From contig NC_052162.1 in the NCBI RefSeq assembly GCF_902713615.1, positions 110,511,811 to 110,575,810 on the forward strand: 64,000 nucleotides of DNA, in the 5' to 3' direction. Of the stretch, positions 11,546-57,346 are shown in pieces; position 1 is the first letter of the stretch, and the number at the start of each line of letters is the position of its first letter. A model generated the notes under the pieces. The model was not told the DNA's origin and did not search any database. It saw only the letters and a list, made by a program, of their open reading frames with translations. The position numbers and the translations under genes were made by a program. This DNA is from Scyliorhinus canicula. Lineage: Eukaryota.

Positions 11546-12462
11546 TTAAATTCTTATTTTTATTCTTCTTTTATTAACTAATTACTTTAAGTGGACAGGA
11601 TCCTCTGGGCGACCAGGAGGCTTAGAATCGCAACTAAGGATGAGCTTATGGTCTGCACTGTCCAAGTTTCTCCTCTAGGGGCCACCAAAAGCTGGAAATT
11701 TATGAAACATCAGAGTGAGTGACGCAACCATCGGTGATCATTCTGAAGCTGATAAAAGGCAAAGTGTTATGATCCGTGATGAGAATCTGATTATTTGCAA
11801 TGTATAAAACTATGAGAGAAAGATGTCTGCACTATCGGATGATAACACAGACCAAAGGTATATTTTATGTCAAAACATACTTTAATTTAAACACAGAATT
11901 AACAACATGAACAACAAAGTAATATATTTACAATCAACAGTTCTTAAATCAAAGAAGGAAATCTAACTTACTTCCTAAATCTGCCAATAAATATTCCAAT
12001 TATCAAACCAATAAAACTCAAATACGACTAATAAGTAAAGTTAACAACCAGGTTTTGCCTGTTTTTCTTTGTGCACTTTCCTCGGAGAGAAAGTTTTTCA
12101 AGAACAAACTGAAAACAATTCTTCTCAGACTGAAGTCCTCTGGAAAACTGACCACAGAAAGGACGGGCTTCTCCCCTTAATAACATTATTCTTACCCACA
12201 GAATAAGGTATTATTCTGTCTTCTCCCACTAAGATATCCCAAGATCTGTTTAGCCAGGACCAAATACAATTCCTCATAAATTAACTACAACCCAAGGACC
12301 TTCAAACCAAAACAATATTCCATCAGCCAGCTATTTGTAAAGAAGTAAATGGTAAAAATTAATGATTATCTCACTTTGACAATCCCTTAATCACATATTT
12401 AGCAGACATAGTTTCTAAATCTTATCCAGGTTTTTAAATATTATTATTACAAGAAATATAAA

Positions 12463-12795
12463 TGATGTGGAGATGCCAGCATTGGACTGGGGTGAGCACA
12501 GTAAGAAGTCTTACAACATCAGGTTAAAATCCAACAGGTTTGTTTTGAATCACTAGCTTTCGGAGCGCTGCTACTTCCTCAGTACCCAGTCTGCCACTCC
12601 TGTTGTTCGAATTCAGGATTCCGTCGGTCACGGGCGGTGGAAGGTGTAGGAGTTCTTTGGTGGTATTCCGTATGATTTGATCCAAATTGCGGAGCGTATT
12701 CTGCGATACCTCTGAGGAAGGAGCAGTGCTCCGAAAGCTAGTGATTCAAAACAAACCTGTTCGACTTTAACTTGGTGTTGTGAGACATCTTACTG
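12463..12795 (-). mobile_element. Penelope-like terminal inverted repeat (arms 12499-12582 and 12712-12795) enclosing a 129-bp R2 retrotransposon fragment
   Basis: Arms match the PLE terminus at 43155-43272. The spacer translates on minus to VSQNTLRNLDQIIRNTTKELLHLPPPVTDGILNSNNRSGRLG. Diverged TSD AAGAAATATAAA/AACAAACATAAA. Confidence 0.8.
12712..12742 (+). ncRNA. Minimal PLE-type hammerhead ribozyme motif
   Basis: CTGAGGA-A-GGAGC AGT GCTCC-GAAA-GCTAG: CUGANGA core, stem II, GAAA. Mirror copy on minus at ~12552-12582. Confidence 0.6.
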
Positions 12796-13272
12796 AACAA
12801 ACATAAAATATAACAATTTCTTATGCTCATCGCAAAGGTTTATTGCAATTATTACAAAGCGCAGAATTTTAAATCTGTGGCTTGTAATTTCTTCATTCAT
12901 GGTGAGGACATCTGGTCGTTGATGTATCAACAAATTTCCAAAATAAAATAACGTAGTTTTGCAATTTAAAGAATGAGAAAAATTATTGGAGTGCATTTGG
13001 CTTGGAATGCACAAAAAAACCCAAACATCATTCACCCCAATCATGTTACTGCAGTGTATGCTCCACATGGACAACCTCTCTCTCATTCTATTTTGTGACG
13101 CCATACTGGGCGTTCATTCTCACCTGGGCCAAATCGGGTGGCCCTTAAAGACACTAATCAAAAAGAAATATACTGCAGATGTTATTTGTATGAAATAACA
13201 TAGAACATGCTGCAAATATTCAGCCGGTCTATACGCATCTGTGGAGCAAACAATAGGGTTGACCAGTCTCAG

Positions 13273-28298: not shown

Positions 28299-29228
28299 TC
28301 ACGCATGCACGTGCTGATGTCTCAGCAAGTGGGACGATCGCGTGAATCCCTTCCCGCATATAGAGCAGGTGAACGGCCTCTCACTGGTGTGCACCCGTTG
28401 ATGCCTCAGCAGGTTTGACGATCGATTAAATCCTTTCCCACACACGGTGCAGGTGAAGGGCCTCTCTCCGCTGTGTGTGCGCTGGTGGGTCAGCAGGTTG
28501 GAAGACAGGGTGAATCCCTTCCCACACACCGAACAGATGAACGGTCTCTCCCCGGTGTGAATGCGCCGGTGTATCAGCAGGTCCTTTGGGCTTTTGAAGC
28601 TCTTCTCACAGTCGGAACATTTAAAAGCTCTCTTATCAAAGTGAACCAGTTGGTGTGTCAGAAGGTGAGATGAATTAGAGAATCCCTTCCCACACACGGA
28701 GCAGCAATAAGGCCTCTCCCCGGTGTGAACTCGCTGGTGTGTCCGGAGATTAGATGACTGGATGAATGCCTTTCCACAGGCGGAGCAGGTGAACAATCTC
28801 TCTCCAGTGTGAACTCGCTGGTGTGTCCGAAGGTTGGACGCATGGGTGAATCCCTTCCCGCACACCAAGCAGACGTACGGCCTCTCCCCGGTGTGAATTC
28901 GTTTGTGCTGAATGAGGTGAGACGACTGTCTGAATCGCTTGTCACATTGAAAGCAACAGAACGGCCTTTCATCAGTGTGAACAAGCTGGTGTTTGATTAG
29001 ATCGGCAGAGATTTTAAAGCAATCACCACAGTAAGTGCATTTAAAGGGCCTCTCGTCGCTGTGAACCCGCTGGTGCAACTGGAGGCTGGACGACAAAGTG
29101 AATCCTTTCCCACACAGGGGGCAGGTGAATGGCCTCTCCCCAGTGTGACTGCGCCGGTGAGTTTCCAGCTGGGAGGGATAACTGAATCCCTTCCCACAGT
29201 CCCCGCATTTGCATGGTTTATCCATCAT
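28299..29228 (-). CDS. C2H2 zinc-finger protein ZNF-A, 11 fingers, no effector domain, 309 aa
   Basis: Intact ORF of 11 CxxC..HxxxH fingers with TGERPF linkers; acceptor CTTTTACAG at 29582 upstream. Confidence 0.92.
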
Positions 29229-56143: not shown

Positions 56144-57346
56144 CTACTCAACAGTGTGAACTGACTGGTGCTTTTGCAGGTTACAGGCCTTTTTGAAACT
56201 CTTCCCGCAGTCAGAGCACTTAAACAGCGTTGGCGCGTGGACTCGCTGGTGGCTCTGCAGGTTCGATGACTGGGTGAATCCCTTCCCGCACACAGAGCAG
56301 GTGAACGGCCTATCCCCGGTGTGAACCCGCTGGTGAGTCACTAAAACCCATTGCCGTTTGAAGCCCCTCCCACAGTCCAGGCACTTGAACGGCCTCTCAT
56401 CAGTGTGGACCCGCTGGTGCGTTAGCAGGTTGGATGAACGAGAGAATCCCTTCCCGCACTCAGAGCAGGTGAATGGCCTCTCCCCGCTGTGGACCCGCTG
56501 GTGTGTGCGCAGGTTGGATGCCTGGGTGAAACCCTTCCCGCACTCGGGACAGGTGAACGGCCTCTCCCCGGTGTGAACCCTCTGGTGTATCAGCAAAGGG
56601 GTCGACTGAGTGAATCCCTTCCCGCAGATGGAGCAGGTGAAGGTTCGCTCCAAGGCATGATCATGTCGGTGTCCCTTCAGCCTTCGGGAGCTGCTGAAAC
56701 TCATCCCACATTCAGAGCATTTGAAACGTCTCTCATCACTGTGAACTTGCTTGTGCTTCACGAGATGGGTTAACCGGCAGTACCCCTTCCCACAGATGGA
56801 GCAGATGAAGGGCCTCTCCCCGGTGTGGACACGCTGGTGCGCCAGCAGGTTAAAGGATCGACTGAATCCTTTCCCGCACTGACAGCAAGTGAACGGCCTG
56901 AGCCTGGTGTGCAGGTGGCGGTGCTGCTGCAGTTCCTGGAGGCTCTTGAAGCTCTTTCTACAGTCGGAACATCCAAATGGTCGCTCAGCTGTGTGAGCCA
57001 GCTGGTGCCGTGCCAGATTCTGTGCGCATTTAAAGGTCTTCCCACAGCCAGAGCATCGAAATGGCCGCTCCTCGGTGTGAACAAGCTGGTGCGACCGCAA
57101 GTGGGACAGGTAAACAAATCGCTTCCCGCACAAGGAGCAGGAGTGCTTGTTATTCCCGATCTGATCCCGACTAGCCTGCAACTCAGGCGACGAACCGTCG
57201 TCTCCCGTTTCGCCGGGCGACATCTCCCCGGCACAATGCTCCACATGTCTCTTTGTGATAGATGAGTCAGCAGATCCACTTGGGAAACATGGCTGTGGCT
57301 GATCGGTGCTGCTGCTGCTACCGCCGCTGCTCACTTCCCCTTCCAT
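56144..57346 (-). CDS. C2H2 zinc-finger protein ZNF-C, 12 fingers, Ser/Gly-rich N-terminus, 400 aa
   Basis: Intact ORF with 12 fingers and TGERPF linkers; acceptor TTCCAGCAG at ~57382-57390. Confidence 0.93.
   Translation of the reverse strand: MEGEVSSGGSSSSTDQPQPCFPSGSADSSITKRHVEHCAGEMSPGETGDDGSSPELQASRDQIGNNKHSCSLCGKRFVYLSHLRSHQLVHTEERPFRCSGCGKTFKCAQNLARHQLAHTAERPFGCSDCRKSFKSLQELQQHRHLHTRLRPFTCCQCGKGFSRSFNLLAHQRVHTGERPFICSICGKGYCRLTHLVKHKQVHSDERRFKCSECGMSFSSSRRLKGHRHDHALERTFTCSICGKGFTQSTPLLIHQRVHTGERPFTCPECGKGFTQASNLRTHQRVHSGERPFTCSECGKGFSRSSNLLTHQRVHTDERPFKCLDCGRGFKRQWVLVTHQRVHTGDRPFTCSVCGKGFTQSSNLQSHQRVHAPTLFKCSDCGKSFKKACNLQKHQSVHTVE

What the first reader, a model, noticed from the sequence alone, without database searches (positions are those of the whole stretch)
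12463..12795. R2 retrotransposon fragment captured between two inverted hammerhead-bearing Penelope termini
Seen: two 84-bp inverted arms (12499-12582, 12712-12795) of the PLE terminus. Both stop at the same base, the C of the CUGANGA core, and enclose a 129-bp CpG-rich spacer unrelated to the PLE at 43155. On minus the spacer is stop-free: VSQNTLRNLDQIIRNTTKELLHLPPPVTDGILNSNNRSGRLG. Established knowledge: this fits the R2 post-RT motif LDxxIRxxVKxWLHLPxxxxDGILYSxxxDGGLG; R2 normally lives in 28S rDNA; PLE termini carry minimal hammerheads and form inverted ends. Inference: the PLE RT switched template onto R2 RNA in the same sense and integrated it with a ~12-bp TSD. If many PLE palindromes carry different foreign spacers, this is a ribozyme-flanked capture cassette that archives pieces of other RNAs. 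Such a cassette could yield hairpin or small RNAs from either strand.
Basis: partly seen in the sequence, partly recalled or inferred. Interest (0 to 1): 0.85.

Follow-up and report, generated by a model that had tools for sequence, protein, structure and literature searches.

The report
R2 fragment inside twin Penelope insertion
A 345-bp fossil in a shark zinc-finger gene cluster is one Penelope-type retrotransposon insertion, made of two tiny head-to-head end copies that trapped 129 bases of another retrotransposon (R2) between them; it is a tidy record of how the Penelope enzyme works, not a working RNA-capture device.

Summary
Arms 12499-12582 and 12712-12795 are 84-nt inverted repeats, 90% complementary. 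Both stop at C3 of CUGAGGA. The 129-nt spacer is stop-free on the minus strand.

The spacer is R2-derived. It hits solved vertebrate R2 proteins at E~1e-6 and a catshark protein at 86% identity. A bamboo-shark relative hits R2 at E~3e-85.

The arms are 3' termini of a very abundant Penelope-like element (PLE). A longer copy at 43152-44720 carries the GIY-YIG endonuclease.

The left arm has a 36-nt "tail". Its outer end is the family's distal terminus; the right arm's outer end is the proximal one. This matches the published PLE signature of two reverse-transcription start sites, a one-sided tail, extension of both target strands and AT-rich targets. A 10/12 duplication abuts both ends.

Best reading: one old integration primed on both strands, in which the left cDNA jumped onto R2 RNA.

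The "ribozyme-flanked capture cassette" idea is not supported. Both hammerheads lack the helix I 5' strand, Rfam finds none, and the other head-to-head junctions listed are direct.

Capture of unrelated sequence between PLE repeats is already published for rotifers.

This scan has also flagged, unchecked, 18S-PLE and exon-PLE chimeras elsewhere in this genome.

The parts
12451..12462 (.). Left copy of the putative 12-bp target-site duplication (AAGAAATATAAA) in an AT-rich target
   Evidence: An anchored comparison with 12796-12807 gives 10/12 matches at zero offset. An unanchored local alignment is not better than shuffles, so this is only moderately significant.
12463..12498 (-). PLE 'tail': the 36-nt extension present on the left arm only. 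Its outer end is the family's distal 3' terminus.
   Evidence: It is homologous to 43152-43187. The family's commonest 3' boundary is at 43155 and at 12462-12464 (591 and 318+143+83 contigs in X1). A one-sided 30-40-bp tail is a published PLE signature (PMC8557442, PMC11167929, PMC3846280).
12499..12582 (-). Left arm: PLE 3' terminus, sense on the minus strand. It runs from C3 of CUGAGGA (12582) to the proximal terminus position (12499). The hammerhead core is present but the helix I 5' strand is absent, and helix II carries a G>T change at 12573.
12583..12711 (-). 129-nt fragment of an R2 retrotransposon ORF (43 codons, post-RT region), sense on the minus strand and co-linear with the left arm
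   Evidence: PDB phmmer hits R2 proteins 9nl3_A, 9dou_A (R2Tg) and 9nl2_A at E 1e-6 to 1e-3. The best hit among 1.84 billion representatives is P0001 at 86% identity, E 2.4e-13, from Scyliorhinus torazame. Relative P0006 has RVT_1 and hits R2 structures at E 3e-85. Family contigs align to exactly 12583/5-12712 and then run on as unlike sequence.
12712..12795 (+). Right arm: PLE 3' terminus, sense on the plus strand. It runs from C3 (12712) to the family's proximal 3' terminus (12795). It has no tail and lacks the helix I 5' strand.
   Evidence: The family's second 3' boundary is at 43187/43189, which corresponds to 12795 (173+125 contigs in X1).
12796..12807 (.). Right copy of the putative target-site duplication (AACAAACATAAA)
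43152..44720 (-). Reference copy of the same PLE superfamily: 5'-truncated, with an RT C-terminal region plus a GIY-YIG endonuclease ORF (43419-44702), an intact min-hammerhead and a tail-bearing 3' terminus (43152-43270)
   Evidence: The ORF sequence has two Cys between the GIY-like VVY and YIG motifs. There is a weak PDB hit to the GIY-YIG endonuclease II. Atlas neighbours are GIY-YIG/HTH_animal/RVT_1 clusters at 0.96. The terminus aligns to both arms.

Best explanation
This is one old insertion made by a Penelope-like element (PLE) reverse transcriptase/endonuclease at an AT-rich site. It was primed on both target strands and carries a template-jump capture of R2 RNA.

Proposed sequence of events:
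1. The plus-strand 3'-OH on the left primed cDNA at the distal reverse-transcription (RT) start site, which gives the tail and the left arm.
2. The minus-strand 3'-OH on the right primed cDNA at the proximal start site, which gives the right arm.
3. Both cDNAs ran to the same template position, C3 of the hammerhead core. This was probably the 5' end of a short PLE RNA.
4. The left cDNA then jumped end-to-end onto an R2 RNA fragment and copied 129 nt.
5. Its 3' end met the 3' end of the right cDNA, with a 1-nt overlap, and each strand was completed on the other.

The product is a dead fossil. It has two ribozyme-incompetent PLE mini-copies, a non-functional 43-codon R2 piece and a 12-bp duplication. 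If transcribed it would fold into a long hairpin.

Shown: the anatomy, the identity of the parts, the two canonical termini and the reality of the junction. Inferred: the order of events, that the donor was RNA, and the cause of the shared C3 end.
For: Geometry:
- On each side the target strand's 3' end is joined to the antisense of a canonical PLE terminus. The left end falls at the family's commonest 3' boundary and the right end at its second boundary, 43187/9, which corresponds to 12795.
- This is what Frangieh et al. 2024 (PMC11167929) report in vitro: two adjacent internal RT start sites with the tail between them, both target strands cleaved and extended, and AT-rich targets.
- The one-sided 36-nt tail and the head-to-head 5'-truncated copies are published PLE signatures (PMC8557442; PMC3846280).

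Single event:
- A 10/12 duplication abuts both ends.
- Both arms share subfamily-specific states against the 43-kb copy, and each carries about 4 private changes. This fits one source and equal age.

R2 capture:
- The spacer is R2.
- It is antisense on the strand that continues the left cDNA.
- R2-family contigs align to 12583-12712, so there is no filler and the right junction has 1 nt of overlap.

Shared C3 end:
- Of the other head-to-head junctions the tool listed (its best-supported; about 300 more were not shown), nearly all have one arm ending 0-6 nt upstream of C3. Letters between the arms include C, CAC, TCAC and ATTCAC; 11 of the 12 listed are <=6 nt. All 9 opposite-strand joints shown have partner ends at 43265-43277.

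Precedent and reality:
- Capture of unrelated sequence between PLE terminal repeats with duplications is published (PMC3846280).
- The locus is present in runs from three studies.
Against: - The duplication is imperfect and lies in AT-rich DNA. An unanchored alignment is no better than shuffles.
- Family depth falls only gradually across C3 (1.80M, 1.12M, 0.55M, 0.35M per 10-nt bin), so C3 is not the dominant 5' end of all copies.
- The junction hot spot rests on the few best-supported joints that the tool lists. For the second species it may be inflated because alignments stop near 43277 through divergence.
- No pile-up of RNA read starts was seen at C3 (oligo-dT library).
- The donor R2 nucleotide sequence could not be fetched, so microhomology at the jump sites and an RNA versus DNA origin are untested.
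- No empty site was seen.
Confidence: 0.65

Rival explanations
1. Two-step origin. A spacer-less head-to-head PLE palindrome formed first. Later its fragile centre broke and was repaired by end joining, which captured a piece of R2 DNA or cDNA as filler.
For: Both arms end at the same base, as expected for the centre of a perfect palindrome. Direct head-to-head junctions without a spacer are common in this family. The R2 piece lacks the R2 3' end, so it was not made by R2's own integration.
Against: Centre breaks usually remove sequence, yet here both arms are intact to the same nucleotide and there is no filler beyond R2. The directly joined pairs listed are asymmetric: one arm ends near C3 and the other is much shorter. 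No perfect palindrome centred on C3 was seen. The co-linear sense orientation and 1-nt overlap fit a polymerase jump.
Confidence: 0.15
2. A single cDNA with snap-back. One cDNA (tail, arm, R2) folded back and copied itself to make the second arm, rather than a second independent priming on the other target strand.
For: Self-priming and palindromic inverted junctions have been proposed for PLEs (PMC3846280). This reading explains identical inner ends without needing a defined RNA 5' end.
Against: The right arm stops exactly at the family's canonical proximal terminus and lacks the tail. A self-copy should have run on through the tail. The cDNA 3' end (ACCT) and the required landing site (TACC) share no complementarity (sequence). 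Landing exactly at the PLE/R2 junction would be a coincidence.
Confidence: 0.12
3. One reading: a ribozyme-flanked capture cassette that archives foreign RNAs and yields processed hairpin or small RNAs.
For: The transcript would fold into a very stable hairpin (-153 kcal/mol, z -14). At family level, PLE termini show strand-specific A>G changes in RNA, consistent with double-stranded RNA in vivo. Unchecked notes report two other PLE chimeras in this genome.
Against: Both hammerheads lack the helix I 5' strand, and one has a broken helix II pair. Rfam finds no hammerhead. Most of the other arm pairs listed hold nothing foreign. The arms have decayed by about 4-5% each with no sign of constraint. 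This is a single locus.
Confidence: 0.03
4. Assembly artefact that joins PLE repeats to an R2 read.
For: PLE inverted and tandem structures are known to cause misassemblies (PMC8557442).
Against: An independent 121-nt contig with 2 differences bridges the left junction. Junction-spanning 31-mers are present in runs from three studies, and a ~0.2 share is present in a second species.
Confidence: 0.02

Closest known systems
Unrelated sequences or host genes captured between Penelope pseudo-LTRs with target-site duplications (Adineta vaga; Arkhipova, Yushenova & Rodriguez 2013, PMC3846280)
   Same: Foreign sequence is framed by PLE terminal repeats and bounded by a short duplication. An inverted pLTR carries a one-sided ~31-bp tail. 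Template jumps and self-priming were proposed as the cause.
   Different: Here the framing repeats are two minimal inverted termini (84 and 120 nt) truncated at the same nucleotide. The captured piece is only 129 nt, from the ORF of another retrotransposon (R2). The host is a shark.
PLE integration mechanism defined in vitro for Poseidon of Anolis carolinensis (Frangieh et al. 2024, PMC11167929)
   Same: There are two adjacent internal RT start sites with the tail between them. Both target strands are cleaved and extended. The target is AT-rich. The hammerhead lies about 55-90 nt upstream of the start sites.
   Different: That work did not report template jumps to foreign RNA or head-to-head product resolution. 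This locus is a genomic fossil, not an assay, so the order of events is inferred.
LINE-1 template-switch chimeras (U6/L1-type chimeric retrocopies), L1 twin priming, and R2 end-to-end template jumping
   Same: A foreign RNA is fused in sense to the 5' end of a 5'-truncated retroelement copy within one duplication-flanked insertion. Priming from both nicks gives inverted segments.
   Different: The enzyme family differs (GIY-YIG PLE, not APE- or RLE-type LINE). Initiation is internal rather than poly(A)-dependent. Both inverted segments here start at canonical 3' start sites, whereas L1 twin priming starts one segment internally at random.
PLE minimal hammerhead ribozymes (Cervera & de la Pena 2014, PMC4209133)
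   Same: The family terminus has CUGANGA, the extra nucleotide between A9 and 10.1, the G10.1-C11.1 pair, GAAA, a palindromic 15.2-16.2 (AGCU) with no real helix III, and H17 = A or C.
   Different: In both arms of this locus the motif is cut at C3, so helix I cannot form. These are relics, not ribozymes.

Membership tests
Penelope-like element (EN+ PLE) insertion | [quoted passage not shown] | tested here: met
   The longer copy's ORF 43419-44702(-) reads VVY-LIRCRKGC-PEAW-YIGET...H...H. There is a weak PDB hit to the GIY-YIG endonuclease II. Atlas neighbours carry GIY-YIG/HTH_animal/RVT_1 at 0.96. Pfam itself gave no hit.
Penelope-like element (EN+ PLE) insertion | A 30-40-bp 'tail' at only one end; two alternative 3' termini | tested here: met
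   The 36-nt tail 12463-12498 is on the left arm only. Family 3' boundaries lie at 43155 and 43187/9.
Penelope-like element (EN+ PLE) insertion | An inverted 5'-truncated copy adjacent, head to head | tested here: met
   Many further head-to-head junctions occur in the family.
Penelope-like element (EN+ PLE) insertion | Short target-site duplication in an AT-rich target | tested here: inconclusive
   10/12 anchored match, but AT-rich context and no empty site available.
PLE minimal hammerhead ribozyme (min-HHR) | Core CUGANGA, extra nucleotide after A9, G10.1-C11.1, GAAA, palindromic 15.2-16.2, H17 | tested here: met
   Read by eye from the alignment against the criteria in PMC4209133. Met in the 43-kb copy and in both arms from C3 onward.
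PLE minimal hammerhead ribozyme (min-HHR) | Helix I formed by sequence 5' of C3 pairing with sequence 3' of the cleavage site | tested here: not met
   Both arms start at C3. The replacing sequences (GGGUA on the left, UACCU on the right) do not pair with GUGAUUC. The family sequence upstream of C3, ending CAUUCAC, is absent.
Rfam hammerhead families | Covariance-model match | tested here: not met
   No match at gathering score or at E<=10. This is expected for motifs without helix III.
R2 retrotransposon | Sequence homology to the R2 ORF | tested here: met
R2 retrotransposon | An element with RT and RLE domains, its own 3' UTR, inserted at the 28S rDNA target site | tested here: not met
   Only 43 codons from the post-RT region are present. 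The flanks are PLE arms inside a C2H2 zinc-finger cluster. This is a fragment, not an R2 insertion.
Template-switch chimeric retrocopy | Foreign RNA in sense, fused without filler to the 5' end of the retroelement copy, inside one duplication-flanked insertion | tested here: met
   Orientation. R2-family contigs align to 12583-12712 with 0-1 nt overlap. The duplication is only 10/12. An RNA origin of the donor is not testable here.

The most novel reading that the evidence does not exclude
In sharks, PLE template RNAs may have a defined 5' end at the edge of the hammerhead core (C3, -6..0). When the reverse transcriptase runs off this end it jumps. Usually it lands on the partner cDNA, which gives the family's head-to-head pairs. 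Occasionally it lands on neighbouring RNAs.

The captured RNAs seen so far are an R2 co-transcript here and an 18S rRNA in an unchecked note. Both are nucleolar, which would place PLE reverse transcription at or near the nucleolus. Such chimeras would then be a fossil record of the RNAs around the PLE RNP.
Probability: 0.15. Interest if true: 0.6.

Novelty: new member of a known kind. Interest (0 to 1): 0.4.

Why it matters
PLE integration is the least understood retrotransposition mechanism, and its first in vitro system dates from 2024. This locus is a compact natural product that shows several of the in vitro features together in a vertebrate genome:
- both target strands were used;
- each of the two RT start sites was used once;
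- the tail is on one side only;
- the target is AT-rich and has a short duplication.

It also adds two things that the in vitro work did not address. Both cDNAs end at the same nucleotide next to the ribozyme core, and there is a jump onto a foreign RNA.

It gives a concrete rule that can be searched for genome-wide: inverted mini-termini whose inner ends lie at C3. That search would measure how often PLEs capture other RNAs.

The locus has no evident function for the host.

Tried and rejected
- Pfam on the 73-aa frame and on the 43-aa spacer peptide gave no family. The motif lies outside RVT_1.
- Pfam on the 427-aa PLE ORF gave nothing even at E<=10. Identity was established by motif inspection, the atlas and the literature instead.
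- Rfam at gathering score and at E<=10 found no hammerhead.
- The HMMER alignment to R2 appeared to run into the arms (query residues 8-62). I rejected this: only 2/4 and 2/8 arm-encoded residues match, and R2-family DNA contigs stop at the spacer ends.
- Fetching the catshark R2 donor DNA failed because the sample file is too large. Junction microhomology with the donor therefore could not be examined.
- C3 as the hammerhead cleavage site is rejected. The predicted cut is 29 nt downstream, after GCUA.
- C3 as the dominant 5' end of all family copies is not supported by the gradual depth profile.
- RNA 5' ends at C3 or at the cut site: no pile-up, but the run was an oligo-dT library, which is weak evidence.
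- Presence in the second species is only suggested by 3-4 shared 31-mers.
- An unanchored local alignment of the flanks for a duplication was not significant. Only the anchored 12-mer is suggestive.
- Two literature searches failed on term syntax.

Full report
OBSERVATION

- The repeat finder returns one strong inverted pair, 12499-12582 and 12712-12795. It is 84 nt long, 90% complementary, with 129 nt between the arms.
- A 35-mer from the arm is expected 0.00 times by chance in the window.
- The spacer has 9 CpG and a CpG o/e of 1.12, against 0.39 in the flanks.
- The spacer has no BLAST similarity to the element at 43141-44720.
- On the minus strand, one frame is open from 12745 to 12527.
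- An alignment of both arms with the intact copy at 43 kb shows that both arms lose homology at exactly the C of CTGAGGA.
- One detail was added. On the left, homology to the element's end continues for 36 more bases (12463-12498), which the right arm lacks.

THE SPACER IS R2

Pfam finds nothing in the peptide. Other searches are clear.
- phmmer against PDB sequences finds only R2 proteins: 9nl3_A and 9dou_A (R2Tg) at E~1e-6 and 9nl2_A at 1e-3. The convincing part of each alignment coincides with the spacer.
- A full HMMER scan of 1.84 billion representatives gives 7 hits. The best is 86% identical over all 43 residues, E 2.4e-13.
- That best hit is a Scyliorhinus torazame protein. Two other hits are from Chiloscyllium punctatum.
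- The longer hits have RVT_1 upstream of the matched stretch, and some have a restriction-like-endonuclease-type motif downstream.
- One of them, P0006, matches solved vertebrate R2 proteins at E~3e-85, against 1e-39 for Bombyx R2 and 1e-12 for LINE-1.
- In public DNA runs of the species, the spacer bins have word depths of about 20-470, against 5-7 for single-copy flanks.
- Contigs 87-91% identical to the spacer align to exactly 12583/5-12712 and then run on as unlike sequence.

The spacer is therefore a piece of a moderately repeated R2 family. It fills the gap between the arms with no extra bases, and the C at 12712 is shared with the right arm.

THE ARMS ARE PENELOPE-LIKE TERMINI

- The copy at 43152-44720 (minus strand) has a 427-codon ORF. 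Its layout, VVY-LIRCRKGC-PEAW-YIGET...H...H, puts two Cys between the GIY-like VVY and YIG motifs. The literature gives this as the PLE endonuclease hallmark.
- The PDB gives a weak hit to a GIY-YIG endonuclease.
- Atlas neighbours are GIY-YIG/HTH_animal/RVT_1 clusters at 0.96.
- The terminus is extremely abundant in two shark species, with summed word depths of 10^5-10^6.

THE HAMMERHEAD

Rfam finds no hammerhead at gathering score or at E<=10.

The motif does meet every criterion that Cervera & de la Pena 2014 give for PLE minimal hammerheads:
- CUGANGA;
- an extra nucleotide after A9;
- G10.1-C11.1, in a GGAGC/GCUCC helix II;
- GAAA;
- a palindromic AGCU in place of helix III;
- H17 = A or C.

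The family sequence upstream of C3 ends in CATTCAC (loose-end consensus). This can pair with GUGA after the predicted cut.

Both arms here begin at C3. Helix I therefore cannot form, and the replacing sequences do not pair. The left arm also has a helix II mismatch at 12573. The arms are ribozyme relics.

The breakpoint is 29 nt upstream of the predicted cleavage site, so it is not a ribozyme cut.

FIT TO KNOWN PLE BIOLOGY

- Craig et al. 2021 describe an inverted 5'-truncated copy next to PLE insertions, and a 30-40-bp tail that is often present at one end only.
- Arkhipova et al. [quoted passage not shown]
- Frangieh et al. 2024 show in vitro that a PLE protein cleaves and extends both target strands. 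It starts reverse transcription at two adjacent internal sites, with the tail lying between them, and it prefers AT-rich DNA.

Laying public contigs and reads on the intact terminus gives two family-wide 3' boundaries. One is at 43155 (591 contigs in X1, 967 in X16, 888 RNA reads). The other is at 43187/43189 (173+125, 330 and 86+198).

The left arm's outer end is the distal boundary. The right arm's outer end (12795) corresponds to the proximal one.

On the left, the plus strand continues from the target into antisense PLE. On the right, the minus strand does the same. Each target 3' end is thus joined to a canonical start site, which is the geometry of priming on both strands.

The flanks abutting the two ends are AAGAAATATAAA and AACAAACATAAA, a 10/12 match. 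This is suggestive but not decisive in AT-rich DNA.

THE R2 JUMP AND THE SHARED BREAKPOINT

R2 is antisense on the plus strand. The left, tail-bearing cDNA is therefore the one that continued on R2 RNA.

Two independent cDNAs stopping at one nucleotide argues for a defined template end. Support comes from the other head-to-head junctions of the family.
- With this locus as reference, the best-supported joints link an antisense arm cut at variable positions directly to a sense arm. The letters between them include C, CAC, TCAC and ATTCAC, which are 1-6 nt of the PLE's own upstream sequence. Of the 12 listed, 11 are <=6 nt.
- With the intact copy as reference, all 9 opposite-strand joints shown have one end at 43265-43277, around C3 at 43270.

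There are caveats.
- Only the best-supported joints are listed.
- Alignments in the second species may stop near 43277 through divergence.
- Family depth declines gradually across C3, so C3 is a hot spot for inverted junctions and not for all truncations.
- No RNA read-start pile-up was seen, though the library was oligo-dT.
- An Inr-like TCATTC with its A at -6 is noted only as a lead.

SNAP-BACK AND TWO-STEP ALTERNATIVES

Snap-back self-copying is less likely, for three reasons.
- The right arm ends at the canonical proximal site and lacks the tail.
- There is no complementarity for the fold-back.
- Landing exactly at the PLE/R2 junction would be a coincidence.

A two-step origin, with a break at a palindrome centre and filler capture, cannot be excluded. 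It would require insertion with no loss of sequence. The directly joined pairs listed are asymmetric, not perfect palindromes.

AGE AND REALITY

- The arms differ at 8 of 84 positions. Polarised by the 43-kb copy, about four changes are private to each arm. Both arms share subfamily states. This fits one source and about 4-5% decay per arm.
- A contig with 2 differences bridges the left junction.
- Junction-spanning 31-mers occur in runs from three studies of the species.
- A second species holds 0.20-0.27 of these words, the same share as for the whole locus (0.23). This tentatively indicates an orthologous, old insertion.

THE FUNCTIONAL IDEA

- The transcript would fold into a long hairpin (-153 kcal/mol, z -14).
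- At family level, RNA reads show strand-specific A>G and T>C changes at many terminus positions, in 20-50% of reads. The same positions show under 3% in DNA. This fits A-to-I editing of double-stranded RNA formed by inverted copies.
- That is a property of any inverted repeat, and it was not shown for this locus.
- With incompetent ribozymes, neutral-looking decay and mostly spacer-less pairs elsewhere, a dedicated 'capture cassette' is not supported.

Unchecked notes of this scan report an 18S-PLE chimera and an exon-PLE chimera in the same genome. Occasional capture may therefore recur. I did not verify those notes.

VERDICT

This is a real and well-resolved chimeric PLE insertion containing an R2 ORF fragment. 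It is a new member of a known kind, since capture between PLE repeats is published. Its mechanistic interest is moderate: it is an in vivo fossil that matches the recent in vitro model and points to a defined template end at C3.

Noticed in passing
window 43192-43269 (PLE terminus, family level): In the raw RNA run X23, many positions show strand-specific A>G (reads on -) or T>C (reads on +) in 20-50% of reads. The DNA runs show under 3% at the same positions. Examples are 43192, 43193, 43202, 43205, 43215, 43216 and 43269 for A>G, and 43213, 43214, 43233, 43246 and 43247 for T>C. This looks like A-to-I hyper-editing of double-stranded RNA formed by inverted PLE copies.
   Followed up: partly
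window 43155 and 43187-43189 (equivalent to 12463 and 12795): The PLE family has two discrete 3' termini about 33 nt apart, in roughly a 2:1 contig ratio, in both species and in RNA reads. This is the genomic counterpart of the two RT start sites reported for an Anolis PLE.
   Followed up: yes
window 43265-43277 (around C3 at 43270): Head-to-head PLE junctions in public contigs have one arm ending within a few bases of C3. An initiator-like TCATTC motif lies just upstream, with its A at -6. [quoted passage not shown]
   Followed up: partly
window 12208-12459: The left flank of the insertion is itself a moderately repeated sequence, with word depth 100-2300 against 5-7 for single copy. It is probably an older transposable element into which the PLE inserted.
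   Followed up: no
window 12615-12712: A 434-nt contig of run X8 (guessed to be RNA, depth 60) matches the spacer with 14 differences. If X8 really is RNA, an R2-family copy is expressed in this species.
   Followed up: no
window 43419-44702 (-): The ORF of the 5'-truncated PLE copy starts in host repeat sequence: a duplicated ...IHSDWLEDLPLT... segment from the CCAAT-type array. It runs in frame into the PLE RT C-terminus and the GIY-YIG domain.
   Followed up: no
window 28299-29228, 39323-40063, 56144-57346 (all -): Three long ORFs are tandem C2H2 zinc-finger arrays. The window lies in a zinc-finger gene cluster.
   Followed up: no
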